This document shows positions 1 through 45,659 of a stretch of DNA of 64,000 bases, in pieces; positions within the stretch are counted from its first letter, which is position 1, and the number at the start of each line of letters is the position of its first letter. Origin of the DNA: Bigelowiella natans CCMP2755 (taxonomy: Eukaryota > Protista > Cercozoa); contig ADNK01000824.1 of the NCBI GenBank assembly GCA_000320545.1, forward strand, positions 62,001-126,000, in the 5' to 3' direction. A program made the position numbers and the translations under genes. Below the pieces are notes generated by a model that saw only the letters and a list, made by a program, of their open reading frames with translations, did not search any database and was not told where the DNA came from.

Positions 1-716
1 TAGCAGAACCAACAACGCGACCCCAAATTCCAACGTCGTTCCAGGACCCTGGCTTGTCACACACTTCGCATCTTTATCCACAACAACCCGCAACGCACTT
101 GGTTCATTCTCAATACTGTGGGTAATTTTGGAATGAAGCGCTGGATAACAGGTTGCTTTTTTGGGTAGTAGCCCATTTGTTTCGAGCACGATTGCTGGGC
201 TTGCACATATTGCTGCGTACCAACGTTTCGCCTCTATCTGCTGCTTCAGGGCTGCTATGAGCTTCTTGCATCCAGCGAATGTTTTAGCGCCTCCAAACCC
301 GCCCGGAAGAATGATGATGTCGAATTTCGTCTCTTGGAGATCGAGCGACTCCAAATGAGTCTCTGCCACGAACTTCATTCCTCTAGACATCTGACATGTC
401 AGGCTATCACCACCGCCGCCAACTTTCGCGAGTGTGACTTGAACGTCCCCACGAATCAACGTGTCGAATATGCCACTCGTTTCGATCTCCTCACTACCAT
501 CGGCTGGAACGATTGGGAAGATTATGCCGGTGCAGAGGTAGAGCACGAATCAAAGTGGAAATAGGTGACAATGACAAACATGTAGATCAGGGCATTTATC
601 ATCATCATCATCATCATCTCTGCCTTAATGGATAGATTTCATCTCCACGATATTCATCCACAAGAATCGCATGGCGCCCTCATACCTACGCAAACGAGGG
701 CCGTCTTCTTCTTCAT
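1..716 (-). CDS. DJ-1/PfpI (YajL/ThiJ-like) family protein, 3' end runs off the window
   Basis: Exon 1 (716-686) MKKKTALVCV, GT-AG intron 685-504, then ADGSEEIETSGIFDTLIRG...FDIIILPGGFGGAKTF...YAAICASPAIVL...ATCYP...VTSQGPGTTLEFG. All DJ-1 hallmarks are present (EEIE Glu, LPGG, nucleophile Cys in AICA). Confidence 0.92.
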
Positions 717-984: not shown

Positions 985-2154
985 ATGCGCGCAGATAAAA
1001 ACGAGGGCAGCTTTGCTTTGACTGCGGCCCTCATTGTCGTCGCTGTTCTCGTCGTTGCGGTCGTAGTCTGCGAGCACGCACACCCCGTCGAACTTGCGCT
1101 CATCCTCGGAGAAAGAGGGGTGGGGAATTCTCCCTTCCTCCGTCCATTCACGCCATCTTTCCAAACCAAGGCGGGGGATTCGATATGCAACCTAGGATAT
1201 CACCGTAGTTTCTGTGTGTTCAGTCGAGGAGGGGGGCGAGGGAGATGGGTGGACAATGCTATTCTTAGTGCCCCTCCTGACCTTCGTCAAGATGTAAAAA
1301 CGGTGTTAGAGAAAGGAGAAAGGGCGGCAAGAAATTGGGAGCTTACAACGACGCGTTTTCTCAACCCATCGCTGAGGAAAGCTGTTGTTGACATCGTACG
1401 GGATGGGGGAGATGTGCCAGAAGAGCTAGCTGCCCGAGAATGGGGAGGGTATGCGGGGGCAGAGCGTTCCAAGTTAATCCTAGGCAGGAGCGATATGTTA
1501 GAGACAGTTGATCTTAACCCACAACATCTGGTAGAAGAGAATCAATCATCAAAGCCGCCACTATCGGCCAACCTTGAGGAAGAGAGCGTCCATGGCTGCC
1601 ACTACGGAGTTGCGGCATGCCGTATAAAGGGAAACTTCAAATTCGAGCCAACGGACCACCGTTCTATTCTCGGCTCCTTGATGGGGTCTGGAGTAAACCG
1701 TGACGAGTTGGGGGACATTTTGATCCTACCCGACCAAACCGGCGCGCTCGCCTTCACATCGGAACAAATTGCGCCGTACTTGCAAACGGAGATCACGAAA
1801 GTTGGCAGGATTCCGGTCAGTATCGCTACTTTGCCATGGCCTAAAGTGCAAGAGTTGGTCGATGCAGCTGCTCAGTCGAAGCTTAAGGCAGGGAAGGTTG
1901 TCAATGCGGTAGAAGCTTCGCTCCGGTTTGACGCTGTGGCGAGCTCTGCCTTCGGAATCTCTAGGGCGAAAGTTGCGACGATGATACGGAAAGGGACCAT
2001 CCAGCTCAATTGGCGTGAGCGGCAAATCAATGCAGAAATCGTAGAAGGAGACATCATGTCTGCAAGGGGAATTGGACGCGCGCAGGTGATTGAGGTCCAA
2101 GAATTGGCGCGGAAGAATAAATTTAGCATCCGACTATTGAAATTTGTAAAATGA
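985..2154 (+). CDS. Plastid-targeted S4 RNA-binding domain protein (YlmH/Sll1252 family), intronless
   Basis: ATG 985 MRADKNEGSFALTAALIVVAVLVVAVVVC (signal peptide) plus a transit-like segment. Core motifs TRFLNP, WGGYAGAER, HRSILGSLMGSGVNRDELGDI, and a C-terminal S4 domain ASLRFDAVASSAFGISRAK...GDIMSARGIGR. Confidence 0.9.
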   Translation: MRADKNEGSFALTAALIVVAVLVVAVVVCEHAHPVELALILGERGVGNSPFLRPFTPSFQTKAGDSICNLGYHRSFCVFSRGGGRGRWVDNAILSAPPDLRQDVKTVLEKGERAARNWELTTTRFLNPSLRKAVVDIVRDGGDVPEELAAREWGGYAGAERSKLILGRSDMLETVDLNPQHLVEENQSSKPPLSANLEEESVHGCHYGVAACRIKGNFKFEPTDHRSILGSLMGSGVNRDELGDILILPDQTGALAFTSEQIAPYLQTEITKVGRIPVSIATLPWPKVQELVDAAAQSKLKAGKVVNAVEASLRFDAVASSAFGISRAKVATMIRKGTIQLNWRERQINAEIVEGDIMSARGIGRAQVIEVQELARKNKFSIRLLKFVK

Positions 2155-23720: not shown

Positions 23721-23907
23721 CTGAATCGCGTCGATTGGAACGGATCGTCTACACTTCGAGCAACACGAACAAGAAAAGCATTCCCGCCATTTGTGGATGT
23801 TATGTGCGAAATTCATGGGTGATTCACCTTGCGACACGCAACAATTCCTTGTCGCAGGACAAAAAGGCATATCGTGCTGTCTCTTCGAACTGGATCTACT
23901 CCTCACG

Positions 23908-24464
23908 ATGCAAGACCTTCTTCACTTCCGTGAACAAAGGCAGAGGCAGGAGAAGACCCTCGTGTGCTTTGTGAAGGCGCTGGTTGGAAGCAGGGTCGAC
24001 TTTGAATTGCGTGGCGGTGCCATCGTACGTGGAGTTTTGGAAAGCGTGGACGCGATGATGAAGTGAGTGAACTTTTTTCTTATCTTATCATTTCGAATAT
24101 GATTGCTGCTTCCTATCTGATTTATTTTCAAACAGCTGTAAATTAATCAAGGTCCGATGGAAGAAGAAGGTTGTATTTGTAGGGTTGTACTTCTAATATT
24201 CAGCGATGAAATCAATATCCACAATTTCTAATTTGTGTTATTCTCAAGGGACAAACTGCGAAATATGCCGAGTACTCGCACATTCCTGGACGACAAATTG
24301 TGTACATTCACATTCCCGACGAGATCGACGTCAGCAAGAAGCTTGATTCATTTGTAATATCTTAAAGTCCAGATTATTCAAATTACCGATGATCATTAAC
24401 TTAAGTTCTGATCTCAGTTCTCAAGATGACAAGGGCTCGTTTTTTCTTGGAAACTTCGAAGTAA
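23908..24464 (+). CDS. LSM10: U7 snRNP-specific Sm-like protein LSm10
   Basis: EKTLVCFVKALVGSRVDFELRGGAIVRGVLESVDAMMN (Sm1) and GRQIVYIHIPDEIDV (Sm2) fit the LSm10 pattern better than SmD1 or LSm2. The last exon is uncertain. Confidence 0.8.
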
Positions 24465-25638: not shown

Positions 25639-26579
25639 TTAAACGTACTCCTTAGCGTTAAGAGCAGAAAGATCTAATTGTATCCCAGGACCCATTGTGG
25701 AAGTGAGATACACAGATTTCCAGTACTGTTTCTTAATGTCAGTTGGTTTGTTTGCGTCGATGGTGTCCTGAATCGCGCGCAAGTTCTGCAGTAGCGCCTC
25801 ATCGTCGAAGGTAGCCTTTCCGAATGGCATGTGAACAACTCCCTTCTTGTCCGCTCTCAGTTCCAATCTTCCAGCCTTGATTTCCTGGAAATAAAACAAT
25901 TTCAGTACATACTAATGTGGTTGTGTCGAGTTTCGAATCTCACCTTTAGCGTGGTAGGTACATCGGTAGTAACCGTTCCAGATTTGATGGAAGGCATAAG
26001 ACCTTTTGGACCAAGGACTCTTCCGAGACGAGCTATCTGAGGCATCATGTCTGGAGTGGTAATGAGACGTTCAAAGTCGAGGTTGCCTTTGTTAATGTCA
26101 TCAATTAGATCTTGGAATCCAGCGATGTCAGCACCGGCTGCCTTGTATTCCTTGGCATCTTCATCCTTACATAAAACAGCAACCTTCACAGATTTTCCCG
26201 TTCCGTTTGGAAGTACGACCGTAGTCCTCAAGTTTTGAGTGGCTTTACGAGGATCGATGTTAAGATCCGCATGCACTTCCATCGTTTCTGCGAATTTAGC
26301 GCTTGCAAGCTGTTTCAAGAGCTGAATTGCTTCCATAGTTTTGTATGGTTTCTGTTCGACCTTTTCCTTGATCTCTCTGAAACGACGAGACGGTTTGCGT
26401 GCGTATATTTGCGAGCGCGTCGAAGGGGTGGTACCGCAGCTTGTGAATTGCGGTCTAACTGTCAGTGCAGCTCCCACATTTCCTGCGTTCGATCGTCCAT
26501 ATATTGAAGTTACGCAAACTAGGGCCGCAGATGCCAGGGCAATGAAAGCAATAGCGGCATGACTATTTGTCGTTCTCAT
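25639..26579 (-). CDS. rpl1: Plastid 50S ribosomal protein L1 (uL1c), nucleus-encoded with bipartite leader
   Basis: MRTTNSHAAIAFIALASAALVCV signal plus transit peptide; AKFAETMEVH, LRTTVVLPNGTGK, RLGRVLGPKGLMP, KAGRLELRADK, YWKSVYLTSTMGPG. One 59-nt intron at 25885-25943. Confidence 0.96.
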
Positions 26580-33227: not shown

Positions 33228-35819
33228 CATAACATACCAGAGCAAACTCCACAACGCCTCAGACCAGGTGCCCTCGAGATGGAAAAGCGATGCTAGTCGG
33301 TGTTGCCGATCTACCCATTCCTGATTGCTGGCCTCGCGTTTACTCAAACATTGCGCCTTTCGAAGTGCCTCGAGAGCTGCCACCGCAAGGTGATGCTGCC
33401 TTTTCCCTGTGCAGCGTTGAAATGAGTAGTATTAGTGTAAGAAGCACTACTGCTACCGCTGCTAGTTCTGCTACTATTATAACTACTACAACAGCTACTA
33501 CTACTAGCACCCATTTGGACCCGCTCATTGTCCTTCTTCTCGCTTCCCCCCCCCCCCCCCCCCCCCTACTACCACCAGGTTTCGTGCCGATGATAGTCGT
33601 TGTCGGTGTTGTCGCCTTCTTTGCATCGCCACACTCACAGTGCTCGAGCAGCAGCTGATCCCATACGCTGCCGTCAACGATGAAACGTGGAAAGCCAAAG
33701 CTCCTGAACAGGTCGGCAGCAACGCCCTCGCCCCAGAACCGTCTTGACCTCGCCTCAAACCGCCTCCCCATCAGGCAATTGAAGAAATCGGCCAGGCGGA
33801 CTGGAAGCTGATCGATTGTCGAGCGGCGAAGGAGGTCCTTCAGCTTATGCTTGAGGGACCTCGACACCATCTCCGCCATGATCCTGCTGTGGATCATATA
33901 GACGCCTGACTCTCTCTTCGTGTTTGCAGAGATAATCACGTCCCCACCCATCTTGCCACGCAGTGCCGTCACCTTGGTCATGAACTCCTCCTTCCTGGGA
34001 TGGAGCAGGACGAGCAGGAGGTGCCGGATTGGAAGCCCAACCTGGTGAAGAATGGCGGCCACATCGACGTGTCGAGGAACTTCAGCACCATCTCGTCGTC
34101 AGATCGGGCGGGATCTCATTCAGAATCTGACGCCTCCTCCACCTCCTTCATTATGGCGCGCACGGCTTTCTCCACCGTTACGCTGCACATGTGTCGCCTT
34201 CGAGAGGAGAGAGGCAAGAGGAGAGAGGCGGGAGGAGGAGGGGGAGGATAAGGGGGACGAACGGATGAGTGCAACTGTCTTCTTCTCCTTATTCCTTCCT
34301 CTTTTCACCATTACTATCGTCACACCACCACCACCACCACCATGCCATCGTCATCATCATCATCATCATCATTATTGTCGTCATCATCATCATCATCATT
34401 ATCATCATCATCATTATTGTCGTCATCATCATCATCATCATGACCACCACCATTCAGCTGCACGACATACGTAAGTACGTACGTGGCTTGGCTGAGATTC
34501 TCGAAGTGGATCTTCCTTTGGCGTGCCCCCCATCCTGTGAAGGTGTCGGAGCTCAGAGCCGGCAGCTGTGCATCCCTCATTTCACGCCTTAGAAACTCTG
34601 GGCGCAGCATGCGAAAGAACACGCTGCTGTGTACTGGACGAAGATGAGTAGTTTCCCTTGGGTCCTCAGGGGGTGCCCACCTCGCCAGATCTAACAAGTC
34701 TGATAAGGAACGTGGTGTATATAATAATATGTGTGTATGTGTGTGGCCAACGACAAAGAAGTCATACTACTGCTGATGACAATGATGGTGGTGGGTGGTG
34801 ATGATGATGACGATGGTGATAGGGTATTGAAAATCAACACATCAGAAGACATCTGATCGTCGTTAGATATGCTGCTGCACAGTGCCTGATGCTCAACTAA
34901 AATAAAGAAGATACAGTGTCGGTATTGGCGGTTCTGACTGCTGCCATGATATATCCTCTTCCTGCCATGCTTTCTCTCCTCCTTCTCCTCCTCCTCCTCC
35001 TCCTCTTTGTCTTCTTCTTCCTCCTCGGCGCGTTCTTGTGATGGCGGTGAGCAGCTGCTGCCTAATGAACACCTCAAGGACGAAGCTGGATTAGCGACAC
35101 GGTGGCCCTCCACATCTCCCTAATGGCAAATGTATTGGCAGCAGAGCCTGACTTAAATCATTGAGTCGATGGGACTGTCTACTTTGTGAAATGCATCGAT
35201 GATGACATTCTATTCTTCTTTGCTCTGCGCAGCTCGTCGCGCGCAGCATATTCACATTATTGGGAAACATTGGCTTTCCAGAAATGGTTTGTGGAAAAAA
35301 CAAGCCATTGACAACCACGCAACACAGCAGGATCAATCACCCCTGTCCAAAGCATGGTTCCGTGCACGTTGTGCTTGGCCAGATGCAGCTCAGCAGCTGC
35401 CTGTTGGATGCTTCTAGAGAAGGCCGCATCTGCATTTCGTATCGTTCTTCCACCGTCGTTGGATCCATACACAAGCTCGCTGCCTTCGATCGGGAGAATG
35501 GGCATGGCTACAACGCCTGAATGGTAGTTGTCAAGTTATCTCTAGCCTCTTCCTCCTCCTCCTCCTCCTCCCCCCCATCATCATCCAACAGCAATGGTTT
35601 GTCAACTTGGGGTGCGGGGAGACTTACGAAAGCCTCTGTAGTCGACGATTTTCTGCCACGGTACTTGGATGCGGATACCCTGTTTCAGGAAGAACTGGAA
35701 GGGGGGGAGGGGATGTTAAAAGATAATAGCAATAGTGAGGAGGGATATTCTGAAATAGCTAATGGCAGTAGTATAGTGGTAGTAGTCCATTGTACATTTC
35801 TCCATGTTTAACGACTCCT

Positions 35820-38485: not shown

Positions 38486-40585
38486 ATGAAGAAGAAATCC
38501 TCCCCCCGCGACGCCGAACCAGGAGGCTCGCAGATGCCCGAGACGCCCTCAGAAGGTTGGAGTTTTTGGGAGGGGGAAGTGAAAACAGAGGGAAAGAGGG
38601 TCGAAGCAAAGAAACGGAGAAAGAGAGAGTAGGGGGTGGGGCAGAACGAACAGGCACAGTGTGAGTACGCCGCAGTGACTACAACACAAACATGCGTGTG
38701 GATAATGTGCTACTTCGCATGAGTCGATCTCCTCGTGAGCTTGAATCGTGCGGCAGTGTAGACGTGAGAACAGCCAGGCCAGAGAGGGATGAGCTTGAAT
38801 TCAAACGTAAGAGTTCCTTTACTCCCGAAACTAGGCAAGCGGGAGCTTGGACCACGTCTCCCCTCAGACCCAGAACTCAATTTTGCGTCTGCTAGATTCA
38901 ATCCAGACAAAGCTCTACGTGAGGATTCAATTGCTATACCGGTACCATTTTCCGGGATGTGAGCGTATGGGGCGTTTATTAAAGAGAGTTGCTAGATAAG
39001 CAGCTTTTCAATTCGGCCAAATTGGGGTGTGGTTCTACGTGATCCCCCTCCCAACTTGTGTGCTGCATCATCAGGTCCAGGATGCACCGACACGCGACCA
39101 TCTGTCGGCATGTCGCAGCCTTCTTCCGCAAACGGATGACGACTATGTGCCAGCTAAGTAAATGCTAGTCTAGCTGATGATAATGATACATTCCTAAAGA
39201 TCTTCGAGTCCGAGAGTTTATTGGCGCTCGCAGAATATTTCGTTCCCTCCACATTTCTCACAGAAATAGTTAACGATTGTGGTCTGTGTGTGGTGCAGAA
39301 AACCCAGCGCTGCTCGTGCTAATGATAAAGGTAGTTTCTCGTGTACCTCCTAGAATCAAGCACATGGTGCCATCGTGACTAGAACCTACTCTTGTGAATA
39401 TCGAGAAAAAGTAAGCATTTCTCTCCTTTCGTCTTCTTCCTCTTCGTCGCCCCCTGCTCTACTTTATCACCAGAAACAAAAGGAACGTCACGCCGGTTTC
39501 GGAAGAAAATAGTCAAAGGTATCATTATTTTTACACTATCGTTGGTAGGATACTAATGGCGATTATGATCACGTACCCTTCCCCCCCCCCCCCCCCCTAC
39601 GATTCCATTCTCAGATTCTCCAAGAATTTCTTGGAGCCTAGTCCAACAGCGTGTCTGGCGGAGGAATATCGGCGTATGCTATTTAAGGAGGGGGCGTGGG
39701 GGGATGAGTTGGGAGTGTAGCGGCGTGCATGCCAATCGCTGTGAAAGATGAGATATTCGAAGCAACGCAACACCATTGCTTCTAAACTACAAAACATGTT
39801 GTTGCAGCGCTGATGAATCGCCACGAAGCAAAGAAAGCACAGAAGGAAGGAAGAATGTAAAGACTATATTCTGCGAGCGCCAATAAACTCTCGAAGTGTA
39901 TCTTGATATAGAGTGCGTATTGATAGTGGGAGTTGTGTTGTCATACAGATACGGCCCGCTCAGCGTACTCCGAAATCTTTTCATAGAGTAATTGCAACAC
40001 AAATGACTTGAAGCCATACAACTAGGGACACACTCGGTGGAGCTGTCGTTGTAATATTGTGTGTCAATGAAAATCAGCCATGCTTACATGCACATCTTTA
40101 ATTAGGAAAAAAAGGGCGCGGGTTCTTATACGAGGTGTGAAGAGAATAAAAGCCAAGGTTACTGGATATCTACGGGCATTTGACAAGCACTGCAACATGG
40201 TGAAAGAAAGATGAATTAGTATAATATTTCAAGCAGCTTTTGCTGCTGCGTAGTCTCCCCAACGTTCCTATCAAAATGTCACAAATCACTTCGTTCAGAT
40301 TCTCTTCGACGTACTCGAGACTTCTACGCTGCGATTAGCAGAAACTCCCCTAAAGTAAGCTGCATGCCTGCGATAGTAGAGATGATAATACTTTTGTAGA
40401 AGGGATGGAGTATGTCCAGATTTCCTAACTTTTCGCCCAAAAACATTATTTACTCTTGCAGATCTCGTCACATGAACCAGCTTTTTATAAGGGGGGAGAA
40501 TGTTGTAGTTGTTAGTATGGATCCTACAGCGTCTGGTAACGATGAAAATGATCAGGAAAAAGGAGGGGGAAGTAATGGTCGATGA
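38486..40585 (+). CDS. LSM11: U7 snRNP-specific Sm-like protein LSm11, about 12 exons; missed by the ORF track
   Basis: Spliced: HPELNFASARFNPDKAL...IPVQDAPTRDHLSACRSLLP (N-terminal LSm11 motif), YGPLSVLRNLF, RARVLIRGVKRIKAKVTGYLRAFDKHCNM|ILFDVLE (Sm1), RHMNQLFIRGENVVVV (Sm2). Confidence 0.9.
39211..39893. repeat. Perfect 28-bp inverted repeat split between two LSM11 introns
   Basis: cgagagtttattggcgctcgcagaatat (39211-39238) and its exact reverse complement atattctgcgagcgccaataaactctcg (39866-39893). Confidence 0.9.
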
Positions 40586-41567: not shown

Positions 41568-43107
41568 TTAGATCATGGAACCGAGATGAACTTGGACTCC
41601 CATTTTTGGCTTCGCGCCAAGATCATTGAGGTTGACATCTGCACCAGCGCTAACTTCAACACCTGCACGGACCTTGTGGTGGACAGCAACACCAACAGTT
41701 CCTGAAGCATCGATGCGTCCGGACACGGTGGAAGAGTCATCGAGGGAGTGGGAAACTCCTGCCATGAAATTGTGGCCCTTAGTCTGGAAGTTGTAGCTCC
41801 CCTTAGCGGCAACTTTTGTGTCTGCGTCAAGAGTCTTGTATGCGGTTGCAGAAACTGTGTCGGTACCCTGAAGCGATCCAGCGATAGAGTAGTCTGGTCC
41901 GGAGTACTTCATTCCGATGCTAACCAAACACAGCAGACGAGAATGCCCAAGTTAATTCACATTCGCAGCGGGAGATTTAACTATTTATAAGTGGCCGCGT
42001 AACCAACGATTGTTTAATATTATATCACAACCTGTGCGCAGATACGCCGTCCTGAGTGCCCTTAACCTCTGCTCCCAGGGAAACTCCATCGAGGTTGTTG
42101 ATTCCTCCTACTGCCATGCTTCCGTGGAAAGATCCAAGTGTTTTGTCGGTCAGGCCACCAACACCAAGACTAGCTTTGAAGTTGTCCGAGGTGTACTTGG
42201 CTTCTGCATCAACCGAAGATCCTCCACTGGAAACCTTCATTTCAAGATCTGCATCCCCCATCTGAACCAAAACGTAGCTCTCGTTAGGGCTGGCGATTCT
42301 CACACCTACTATTGTCTGATCTTTCAACAGTGAAGTCAACCTTTTGGGTGGTTTTTCCGCCGGCACGGATCCTTGATTTATCATCCAGAGAGATGAATCC
42401 CTTCAAGTTATCTCCGAACTGTCTTTCGAGCTCCAAGGAAATGAGGTCGCTTGTCTTTGCGGTGCTGCTGTCGCGGAAACGGATCTCACCTGTGGATCAA
42501 CGATTATGTTCAGAAAGGATACTCATATATAACTCCATTCCTAAGTGCGTAAGAGACTCACCGGGTTCGTCAAAGGTCTTGGAAGCGACGACTTTGTTGC
42601 TACCGCTGGTTGCCTCGAGCTTCACCTTGCTGTCCTTGGGAAACTTCTTATCTGAACATCATTGGCCATGACTTGAGTGAAAGTATCTAAATCTCTTTAG
42701 ATGATTAAAGTACCGTCAAGAATTCCTCGAGCATCGGACCCAAAGTCTCCGTAGAATCCCTTTGCATCCGCATACTTCGATCTGTCAAGACAGCGAGTTT
42801 AATTAGGCGGGATTCATAGCGTGACACCTTCCAGTGCTCACCTGAAGCCAGAATTTGCGTCACAGCCTCCTCTGAGACGGTAGAGGCTGGGGCCACGGTT
42901 ATATTGCGTGACGCCTTCTGGATATTCAGAAACCCCGCCTACATTGTAAAAGCAGCCATTACACGAAGTTCCGACGAAGGAATCGAAGAACTAACCTTGG
43001 AGGTTTCCGGATCTTCCGGTTGTAAAGACAACACAGCAAAGAACCACTGCAGCCAAGGCTGCAGGAAGGTAGAGCGAAGATCGGGAGCGACGAGAGCGAG
43101 CGAACAT
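41568..43107 (-). CDS. VDAC/porin-3 family beta-barrel with N-terminal signal peptide and RLRGG-ending leader, 7 exons
   Basis: Exons 43107-42996, 42938-42842, 42781-42714, 42651-42562, 42489-about 42341, about 42262-42032, about 41919-41568 join in phase. Core FYGDFGSDARGILDDKKF, SIGMKYSGPDY, GVSHSLDDSSTVSGRIDASGTVG, and C-terminal beta-signal KMGVQVHL. Confidence 0.88.
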
Positions 43108-44110
43108 CTTCCAAAAGGGGGGGGGTGGGGATCTGACGGTTGAAGTCTGTGTTAAAAACAATAGGGTCTCTCGCAAGAGCCGAGCGGCACAAATCCGAAC
43201 ATTTATTTCTTCCACAAAGACAGGGTATTTACCGTGTCGCATTTCAGAATTACACCCAGTTTTCACAGGCCACTGAGAAAAACTGCGAGACCGGAAATTG
43301 ACCCTTCTCCGAATGGGCGGGAAGATTGTGATTTCCCAATGTGAGACAACTAGAATGAACAAAATTTAGACAGAATTCCAGCCCATTCCTCTTGGTGATT
43401 TATTGCCGCAAAGAGCTTTTGGACGGGATACCCCTTCTTGGTAGTTCTTACGCATTCCAGTACCCCCTTTTCAGATGAAGGTGTCATCGGGGGCATTGGA
43501 TTTAAATGTGTGCGACATAATTCTGAAGCCAATTCCGACTGTTAATCGACCTGTTTATTTCTACACCGTGTCACATCATCTAAGTCATCAATTGTGAAGC
43601 AAACGGATGATTGGTCAATTCTTTTCTTTTTTTTTTTCCACAGTGAATCGTCCAAACTGCTGTTCTCTTTGTTCTTCTCTTTCCTCTTCGCTGCTCTTCG
43701 ATTCCCACTCTTCCGAACGGCCAAAATTGGACATTCGCCGAATTTCTGCGTGGAGCTCTTCAGACAGAAATTCCACCTGAAAACATCTTGAAGTGCCCAC
43801 GAGATCTGCACCCTTCAGGCAGGAACCGTAGCTTTTGGCGGCGAAAATCGTCCAAGTTGGATAAGATTTAATTTATACTAAATATATCCTAAATAAAATG
43901 TCTAGTTAGAGCACCGAGACGAGGAAGACTTAGGCTACAACAGCTCCTGATTCCCGACCGCAGGGTCAATTCGTCTGCTGCACTTGCGACCATAACAGCC
44001 CCCCCAAGCCCCAAGTAGAGATACGGACAAGGCTGGGATAGCGGACTTGATTACATAGATAGTGTGGGAAATTTCTGCGAGCTGGCATACCTTGCTGCGA
44101 GTGTCCTCCA

Positions 44111-45659
44111 ATGGTTGTGGTCGATAGTTGCGGCGTGTGCGCATCTTCATCCTATGGCCGTTCTTCGTCAGTAGTTCGTGCAAGACTCAGGCGTGCCGCT
44201 GCCACTGCCGCTGTTCTCTGTCTGGGGGCAATCTTGAATGTCCATCACCTCACGACGACGCCCCGCAATAACAACTACGGTGACTTCGCAAGGGTGCGGG
44301 GAAGGAGCAATCGCACTGCGGCAGCATTAGCTGCATACCACACAGCGTTCTCTGCCGCAAATATCGCCACATCTGAATGCAGAAGGGCTGGCAGATTTGA
44401 CAGATGTCCTGATGCAAGTTCTTGGAACATACTCAGAGGGGGGAAGCCTACGGTGTTGCTAAGCTAGATAATCCAGAAATGGAACTTTTGTCAAGTTATT
44501 TCGCCGTATTGAGCATTAGTCCTGCGATATGCCGGAGCTATTTTCGCATGATGAGTTCGTCATTTCTTTTACTACTATAAATGCAAACCACAACAAGCGA
44601 CACAGCTCCGGCTTCGATCCGAACAGCAACACTGATGACATGCATAAAAACCGACACACGAATACCGATAATTGCCGTTGTCTCAATCATCCCTTCTTTA
44701 GCAGCACCTACTCTAATCGTTCTCACTGTATCCACAAAATTATTCAGCGACGTGAGCTAAGTGAAGACTCGAGCAGCGATGGTATATATTCATGGCTTTC
44801 CCCGTTAGAATTACGTTCCTAATACTTTAAATACTTGCATCTTCGATACACAGACTTTGAGAATTCTTGGGTCTACCAGCACACTGTCAATCGACCTTTT
44901 CTCTGCGAGGTAGCAGTAGTTATATATAGTGTTAAAGATAGTATATACAATAGGAGGAAGAAGAAGAAGAAGAAGAAGAAGAAGAAGAAGAAGAAGAAAA
45001 TATTTTAATTATTTTCGTTCCTCACTCTCACTCCACTTTGTTCTCTCGTGTCCTACCATCATTTTTCATTATTACTTATAGGTAAATCCGGAATGGATCC
45101 GCGACACCTTCAACCTAAATGGTCTATCGACGCAGGTAGTAGATCGGTCATCTCTGCGACATTCTAAGCTCAGCACCTGAGAGAAGTTTGTTTCATCTGT
45201 TCGTAACTTGTACCAATCAGATTCCTCACTACGAGATCTGTCTTCGGAGAATTCTGGACTATGTACGACAGAAGCCAAATGATACGTTATCTGCGCTATT
45301 ATTATCGCTACCGTTTCAATCATCATTATCATCATTGTCATTATCATTATCATCCTACTCGTCGCAACCATCACATTAAATGCTTATAAATGCCACACAT
45401 AAACAATAAATGCTGATAGCCATGTATCTACCAAAATACAGGAGGTTGGTTTCGACAAGCTGCCCCCGAAGAAACAGGCAGAGCTCGAAGCATGTTGTGG
45501 TAGTTCTAGGACCATCCACAATAGAATATACGAGTTTAGAATTACTTCATTGAGAATAACAAAAACGTGAATTTCTAACGATATTTCATTGATTCGAATG
45601 AAAATGGTGGCTATGATCATGACAAGTAGGAAAGATGGCGAGGAGTACAGCACATCGTC

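What the first reader, a model, noticed from the sequence alone, without database searches (positions are those of the whole stretch)
41568..43107. VDAC-family porin with an ER signal peptide and a ubiquitin-like RLRGG leader end: candidate pore of the complex plastid envelope
Seen: phase-consistent splicing gives MFARSRRSRSSLYLPAALAAVVLCCVVFTTGRSGNLQGGVSEYPEGVTQYNRGPSLYRLRGG (62 aa), then CDANSGFRSKYADAKG and a complete VDAC-like barrel with an intact C-terminal beta-signal (KMGVQVHL). Known: mitochondrial VDAC/Tom40 proteins have no cleavable N-terminal leader and are inserted by SAM. A hydrophobic signal peptide of this type also starts the plastid proteins in this window. RLRGG is identical to the ubiquitin C-terminus. 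Inference: a mitochondrial porin has been rerouted through the secretory pathway to a membrane of the four-membrane plastid. It could be a metabolite or protein channel of the periplastid or outermost membrane, where chlorarachniophytes lack SELMA and the translocon is unresolved.
Basis: partly seen in the sequence, partly recalled or inferred. Interest (0 to 1): 0.92.

Follow-up and report, generated by a model that had tools for sequence, protein, structure and literature searches.

The report
Mitochondrial-type pore carrying an export tag
In a group of marine algae, a gene for the standard mitochondrial pore protein has gained a conserved secretory-type address tag that ends in a ubiquitin-like cutting site, which suggests the pore has been moved into a membrane of their four-membrane chloroplast.

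Summary
The window is Bigelowiella natans DNA; the gene is JGI model Bigna1|86949 (minus strand, 7 exons, 365 aa after correcting intron 5). It encodes a full 19-strand VDAC (not Tom40) with N-terminal helix and beta-signal, behind a 62-residue leader: Arg-rich start, hydrophobic stretch, linker, RLRGG. The leader is real and conserved: transcripts from Norrisiella, Partenskyella and a 26-33% identical environmental relative all carry it. RLRGG is invariant while the rest of the leader is 15-32% identical. An unidentified plankton protist outside this clade has the same design, with a normal-sized VDAC starting right after GG. So RLRGG probably marks a cleavage site. Location is not shown. My best reading: the protein travels via the ER into the periplastid compartment, is cut after RLRGG, and is inserted by an Omp85-type insertase into the chloroplast outer envelope as a metabolite pore. 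A mitochondrial destination after cytosolic cleavage remains open; a second, leaderless VDAC in this genome could not be looked for. No paper in the searched library describes this protein or the motif.

The parts
42996..43107 (-). Exon 1: start codon, Arg-rich n-region (43107-43075), hydrophobic h-region (43074-43024), start of linker
   Evidence: matches residues 1-37 of P0015
42939..42995 (-). Intron 1, 57 nt, GT-AG, phase 1, holds an in-frame stop
42842..42938 (-). Exon 2: linker, RLRGG, conserved Cys and start of mature protein
42865..42879 (-). RLRGG, residues 58-62; invariant in orthologues; inferred cleavage site
42714..42781 (-). Exon 3: VDAC N-terminal helix region (42759-42715)
42562..42651 (-). 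Exon 4: strands 1-2
42341..42489 (-). Exon 5: family-specific loop of about 20 aa, strands 3-5
42262..42340 (-). Intron 5, 79 nt, phase 0 (corrected; the JGI model uses an acceptor at 42316 and keeps 18 extra residues)
   Evidence: orthologue alignment; low pLDDT of the extra residues
42032..42261 (-). Exon 6: middle strands of the barrel
   Evidence: P0001 transcript product begins here
41920..42031 (-). Intron 6, 112 nt, phase 2; same position as the retained intron in the Norrisiella transcript L010
41568..41919 (-). Exon 7: C-terminal strands, beta-signal (41606-41583), stop codon
   Evidence: Porin_3 4.9e-17

Best explanation
A chlorarachniophyte VDAC paralogue retargeted to the complex plastid. 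Step 1 (inferred from layout): the Arg-rich/hydrophobic start sends the chain into the ER, and the linker acts as the transit-peptide-like part that carries it across the two outer plastid membranes into the periplastid compartment (PPC), the remnant endosymbiont cytosol. Step 2 (inferred from conservation): a protease that reads the ubiquitin tail, most simply a deubiquitinase-like enzyme in the PPC, cuts after RLRGG and frees a leaderless VDAC. Step 3 (inferred from established barrel biogenesis): the intact beta-signal is read by an Omp85-family insertase. The only barrel-containing membrane facing the PPC is the third one, the chloroplast outer envelope, because the endosymbiont's mitochondrion is gone. 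Step 4 (inferred from fold): it forms a wide 19-strand pore for metabolites and ions between PPC and chloroplast, doing the job of plant outer-envelope solute channels. Shown here: gene structure, VDAC fold, expression and conservation of the leader, invariance of RLRGG at the boundary. Not shown: location, cleavage, the protease, conductance.
For: Leader in uninterrupted transcript ORFs: Partenskyella-type, 8 contigs, with an in-frame stop just upstream of the ATG in those inspected; Norrisiella; environmental L001. RLRGG invariant while the leader before it is 15-32% identical. AlphaFold confidence rises at the motif in P0002 (residues 1-60 below 50). In P0040 a 270-aa VDAC begins immediately after GG. 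Best 19-residue hydropathy 1.8-2.5, like the plastid ribosomal protein L1 in the window (2.4); leaderless VDACs reach at most 1.1. Chlorarachniophyte plastid proteins use a signal peptide plus transit peptide, and a mitochondrial-type ABC transporter with a PPC-directing leader is placed in the second/third plastid membrane (PMC10927497). A ubiquitin with signal and transit peptide exists in B. natans (PMC3542566) and chlorarachniophytes have a plastid-type Uba1 orthologue (PMC12412216), so ubiquitin enzymes in the PPC are plausible. ZUFSP-family enzymes cut the bare RLRGG peptide (PMC8776766). Beta-signal kept in all members. No Met between residue 1 and the middle of the barrel in B. natans, so no alternative start yields a whole leaderless porin.
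Against: No localisation or N-terminal data. Most deubiquitinases hardly cut RLRGG without the ubiquitin fold (PMC8776766), and only these five residues match ubiquitin. No porin is mentioned in the main text of the B. natans plastid proteome or the Amorphochlora pyrenoid proteome (supplements not held). A separate leaderless mitochondrial VDAC in B. natans was not found and could not be searched for properly. No orthologue surfaced from Lotharella, Amorphochlora, Gymnochlora or Chlorarachnion (sensitivity limited). The identity of L001 and P0040 is unknown; if either is from a plastid-less protist the plastid reading weakens. Omp85/Toc75 in the third membrane is from my own knowledge (Hirakawa et al. 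2012 not held).
Confidence: 0.45

Rival explanations
1. It ends up in mitochondria. The leader is a disposable, ubiquitin-fusion-like piece that a host cytosolic deubiquitinase removes, perhaps during translation or while tethered to the ER; the freed barrel goes through TOM/SAM. Dual targeting is a variant.
For: Intact mitochondrial-type beta-signal and N-terminal helix. Cleavage after GG gives a normal-sized VDAC. B. natans has many cleavable ubiquitin fusions (PMC6332867). No other B. natans VDAC was recovered.
Against: A basic n-region followed by a hydrophobic stretch should put RLRGG in the ER lumen, out of reach of cytosolic enzymes (inference). A conserved hydrophobic signal has no purpose for a protein that needs no leader. 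The family is very divergent (long stem, 100/99 support) with an extra loop and slightly acidic mature part (net -2 to -7), as expected of a neofunctionalised paralogue; weak evidence.
Confidence: 0.22
2. One reading: a pore of the periplastid (second) or outermost plastid membrane, for metabolites or, less likely, for preproteins in place of SELMA.
For: Chlorarachniophytes lack SELMA and the second-membrane translocon is unknown (PMC12412216; PMC5756292; PMC3542566). The leader would bring it to these membranes. VDAC and Tom40 share the fold.
Against: No barrel insertase is known in these membranes (own knowledge), yet the beta-signal is conserved. Sequence and fold are closer to VDAC than Tom40 (profile E 6e-10 vs 0.1; TM 0.80 vs 0.57-0.73). 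A wide open pore in the former endosymbiont plasma membrane would short-circuit the PPC. P0040 shows the design is not limited to SELMA-less cells if it comes from a red-plastid lineage (unverified).
Confidence: 0.17
3. A secretory-pathway porin unrelated to the plastid: pyrenoid capping vesicle, vacuole or plasma membrane, like the signal-peptide isoform of mouse VDAC1.
For: A signal peptide alone only shows ER entry. Signal-peptide proteins localise to the capping vesicle in Amorphochlora. The linker is short (15-27 aa) and not strongly basic.
Against: No barrel insertase in those membranes. Partenskyella lacks a pyrenoid yet keeps the gene. RLRGG points to an enzyme of a cytosol-like compartment, which in this route is the PPC.
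Confidence: 0.11
4. The leader is a gene-model artefact or RLRGG is chance.
For: One RLRGG per 64 kb is expected 0.36 times.
Against: Leader and motif are in intron-free transcript ORFs of three other lineages and a fifth, distant organism.
Confidence: 0.02

Closest known systems
Mitochondrial VDAC (Pfam Porin_3, PF01459; mouse/human VDAC1, VDAC2, yeast Por1)
   Same: 19-strand barrel, N-terminal helix, C-terminal beta-signal; TM about 0.8.
   Different: 55-62-residue signal-peptide-like leader ending RLRGG, a short Cys-containing N-terminal extension, an extra loop of about 20 aa between strands 2 and 3; 12-18% structural-alignment identity.
Tom40 and Mdm10 (same superfamily)
   Same: 19-strand fold.
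   Different: Score clearly below VDAC in sequence and structure.
Chlorarachniophyte bipartite-leader membrane proteins of mitochondrial type, e.g. PPAP9 (ATM-like ABC transporter) and PPAP47 (LETM1-like) of Amorphochlora (PMC10927497)
   Same: Mitochondrial-type transport protein given a signal peptide plus transit peptide and sent to the plastid.
   Different: Those are helical proteins or soluble; this is a beta-barrel that needs an insertase. No RLRGG is mentioned for them.
Ubiquitin fusion proteins of B. natans (PMC6332867)
   Same: Partner protein follows RLRGG and is presumably released by cleavage after GG.
   Different: Here only five residues match ubiquitin, with no ubiquitin fold, and a signal peptide comes first. 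Bigna1|86949 is not in that paper's table.
Mouse pl-VDAC1 (alternative first exon with a short signal peptide; from memory, Buettner et al. 2000, paper not held)
   Same: A VDAC with an N-terminal secretory leader.
   Different: A splice isoform of the mitochondrial gene, contested, not conserved across taxa, no RLRGG, no plastid.
Plant chloroplast outer-envelope solute channels OEP21/24/37 (from memory)
   Same: Proposed job: barrel pore in the chloroplast outer envelope, inserted by an Omp85 protein.
   Different: Unrelated sequence families; this one is of mitochondrial descent.

Membership tests
VDAC (eukaryotic porin) | Porin_3 domain above the curated cut-off | tested here: met
   Exon 7 62.7 bits vs 28.4; P0015 73.3; Norrisiella P0037 covers profile 3-271
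VDAC (eukaryotic porin) | 19-stranded barrel | tested here: met
   19 strands in both AlphaFold2 models; models, not solved structures
VDAC (eukaryotic porin) | N-terminal helix before strand 1 | tested here: met
   Helices at 65-85 in P0002 and 85-91 in P0015; aligns with the Y/F-x-D-x-G start of other VDACs
VDAC (eukaryotic porin) | C-terminal beta-signal (polar-x-G-x-x-hydrophobic-x-hydrophobic) | tested here: met
   Present in all members
VDAC (eukaryotic porin) | Closer to VDAC than to Tom40/Mdm10 | tested here: met
Canonical mitochondrial VDAC | No cleavable N-terminal leader | tested here: not met
   55-62-residue leader in all orthologues
Canonical mitochondrial VDAC | Mitochondrial outer-membrane location and voltage-gated conductance | not testable with these tools
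   needs microscopy and bilayer recording
Chlorarachniophyte bipartite plastid/PPC leader | N-terminal signal peptide | tested here: inconclusive
   Basic n-region and h-region comparable to the window's plastid L1; no SignalP; signal anchor not excluded
Chlorarachniophyte bipartite plastid/PPC leader | Transit-peptide-like segment after the signal peptide | tested here: inconclusive
   15-27-aa Ser/Thr/Gly-rich linker plus RLRGG, weakly charged, unstructured
Chlorarachniophyte bipartite plastid/PPC leader | Directs GFP to plastid or PPC | not testable with these tools
   experiment needed
Ubiquitin fusion protein | Ubiquitin fold ahead of the partner | tested here: not met
   No Pfam ubiquitin hit in exons 1-2 or whole proteins; leader unstructured
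Ubiquitin fusion protein | RLRGG at the junction | tested here: met
Ubiquitin fusion protein | Cleavage after GG | not testable with these tools
   needs N-terminomics or mutant GFP fusions

The most novel reading that the evidence does not exclude
The porin is built into the periplastid membrane and is the missing preprotein channel of SELMA-less chlorarachniophytes, and RLRGG is a ubiquitin-mimic processing signal used by more than one complex-plastid lineage to release proteins in the periplastid space.
Probability: 0.05. Interest if true: 0.96.

Novelty: new variant of a known kind. Interest (0 to 1): 0.76.

Why it matters
If the plastid location holds, it is a mitochondrial beta-barrel re-addressed through the ER to another organelle, and it names a candidate solute pore for complex plastids, where such pores are not identified. 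It also exposes a sharply conserved five-residue ubiquitin-tail motif as a probable processing signal, seen in two apparently separate lineages, which gives a direct handle on where and how leaders are removed in the periplastid compartment. Both points are testable now, since Amorphochlora can be transfected with GFP fusions. If the protein is mitochondrial, a conserved cleavable leader on a VDAC would still be unusual.

Tried and rejected
Whole-protein work used database proteins only (P0015, P0002, P0037, P0040). First guess for intron 5 (42309..42249) and the JGI 25-nt intron were both dropped in favour of 42340..42262 on orthologue evidence. Tom40/Mdm10 identity rejected. Word-index homologue searches were nearly blind (1, 3 and 1 hits); blanks there say little. 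Two metagenome scans found nothing. No contig on record for P0015, P0037 or P0001. A leaderless B. natans VDAC could not be searched for. Host versus endosymbiont origin could not be decided: the tree has few named outgroups and an unresolved backbone. Whether P0040 shares an origin with the chlorarachniophyte clade is open (4% of bootstrap trees, AU p 0.285). P0040's organism could not be named. An LRGG at 44432 on the + strand and one at 24007 (inside an LSm domain) are not leader ends as far as I can tell. P0005 and P0031 checked upstream: no RLRGG leader seen. Literature: no paper links LRGG to plastid targeting or a porin to chlorarachniophyte plastids; Hirakawa 2009/2012, Buettner 2000 and the proteomics supplements are not held. 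SignalP was not available.

Full report
1. The observation. The minus strand carries a seven-exon gene from ATG 43107 to TAA 41570-41568, with GT-AG introns of 57, 60, 62, 72, 79 and 112 nt and consistent phases, 365 codons in all. I searched it exon by exon by reference and left the joined step out. Exon 7 hits Pfam Porin_3 at 4.9e-17. Its best relative in 1.8 billion representatives is an MMETSP product at 95%, whose cluster holds the Bigelowiella natans JGI model Bigna1|86949, P0015. The JGI model uses a 25-nt intron 5 and so keeps 18 extra residues; Norrisiella, Partenskyella and L001 lack them and they fold with pLDDT below 50. The 79-nt intron is the better model.

2. What the mature part is. 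AlphaFold2 models of the Partenskyella orthologue and of P0015 each show N-terminal helices and 19 strands. The best PDB matches are VDAC1, VDAC2 and yeast Por1 with TM about 0.8; Tom40 and Mdm10 score lower. A family profile hits yeast porin at 6e-10 and Tom40 at 0.1. The beta-signal is intact in every member. Family traits are a Cys within three residues after RLRGG, an extension of about 15 aa before the helix and a loop of about 20 aa between strands 2 and 3.

3. The leader is real and conserved. Partenskyella glossopodia (taxon) and a near-identical environmental form encode leader and barrel in one intron-free ORF on eight contigs, with an in-frame stop just before the ATG in the three inspected. 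Norrisiella sphaerica has it too and shares the position of the last intron. Contig L001, 26-33% identical in the barrel, has the leader in frame upstream of the called start. These form one clade, 100/99. All have a basic n-region (net +3 to +5), a hydrophobic stretch (best 19-residue mean 1.8-2.5, against 2.4 for the window's plastid ribosomal protein L1 and at most 1.1 for leaderless VDACs), a 15-27-aa linker and RLRGG. The leader before the motif is only 15-32% identical between lineages; RLRGG is invariant. By chance the motif is expected 0.36 times in the window and about 0.001 times in a given linker, so the conservation is what counts. The window's two plastid proteins (L1, ATG 26579 minus; YlmH-like, ATG 985 plus) have the hydrophobic start but no RLRGG.

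4. A second lineage. P0040, found in the cluster of a weak exon-7 hit, is a 299-aa VDAC with a short classical signal peptide, six residues, RLRGG, and then a 270-aa barrel that starts at once with the usual VDAC helix. It is on four cDNA contigs and a spliced genomic locus of 64% GC from marine samples. It does not group with the chlorarachniophyte clade, but one origin is not rejected (AU p 0.285). It is the best evidence that GG marks the start of the mature protein.

5. How it most likely works. Chlorarachniophyte plastid proteins enter by signal peptide plus transit peptide through the secretory pathway, and a mitochondrial-type ABC transporter has been rerouted this way to the second/third membrane (PMC10927497). 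The leader fits that route. With a basic n-region, RLRGG would pass into the ER lumen and next meet a cytosol-like space in the PPC. B. natans has a ubiquitin with signal and transit peptide (PMC3542566), and the group has a plastid-type Uba1 orthologue although no SELMA (PMC12412216), so ubiquitin-handling enzymes there are plausible. ZUFSP-family enzymes cut bare RLRGG well, whereas most deubiquitinases hardly do (PMC8776766); the protease is therefore unidentified. Cleavage would leave an ordinary leaderless barrel. Barrels are inserted by Omp85-family proteins that read the last strand (established knowledge); the PPC has no mitochondrion, and the chloroplast outer envelope has Toc75/Omp85 (own knowledge). 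Hence the third membrane and a solute-pore role, at 0.45. All plastid readings together come to about 0.62. Mitochondrial delivery after cytosolic cleavage stands at 0.22, because the barrel keeps all mitochondrial signals and I could not show a second VDAC.

6. Known and new. It passes every testable VDAC criterion and fails the canonical one of having no leader. It is not a ubiquitin fusion: only the last five residues match and it is absent from the published list for B. natans. The gene model has been public since the genome release, but no paper in the library links a porin to chlorarachniophyte plastids or LRGG to plastid targeting; key subscription papers and supplements were not available, so prior mention cannot be excluded. 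Verdict: observation confirmed and strengthened, a new variant of VDAC, location and cleavage inferred. Interest 0.76.

Noticed in passing
P0040; L016:24-923, L013:9249-10573: Unidentified high-GC marine protist has a VDAC with signal peptide + RLRGG and a normal-sized barrel starting right after GG; possibly an independent origin of the same design.
   Followed up: partly
window 42262-42340 (-): JGI model Bigna1|86949 probably has the wrong acceptor for intron 5 and 18 spurious residues.
   Followed up: yes
window 42862-42864 (-) and orthologues: A Cys lies one to three residues after RLRGG in all four chlorarachniophyte-clade proteins; it would be at or near the new N-terminus and might be lipidated. 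Unexplained.
   Followed up: no
PMC5635587 Table 1: The presequence of the diatom plastid translocator TPT4b ends in PRGG; RGG at leader ends may be wider spread in complex plastids.
   Followed up: no
L010:795-913: Norrisiella transcript retains the last intron, at the same position and phase as intron 6 in the window.
   Followed up: yes
P0016: A Partenskyella variant has 8 extra Cys-rich residues in the linker, possibly an alternative splice form.
   Followed up: no
window 25905-26579 (-) and 985-2151 (+): Ribosomal protein L1 and a YlmH/S4 RNA-binding protein, both with signal-peptide-like leaders, likely plastid stromal; neither has RLRGG.
   Followed up: partly
window 44111-45400 (+): Divergent neighbour gene with an Arg-rich start and hydrophobic stretch, no Pfam match; an LRGG at 44432 is probably out of frame.
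   Followed up: partly
window 23905-24063 (+) and 40080-40585 (+): Two LSm-domain genes; also a DJ-1/PfpI gene at 1-549 (-) and a Clu/eIF3-p135 gene near 33343-34098 (-).
   Followed up: no
window 43125-43150 (-) and L002:30-56: Similar short 5' stretch upstream of the start codon in B. natans and Partenskyella; significance not tested.
   Followed up: no
P0005; L011: Divergent, basic VDAC-like protein with a Pro-rich N-terminal extension and no signal peptide; the best-scoring relative outside the clade; organism unknown.
   Followed up: partly
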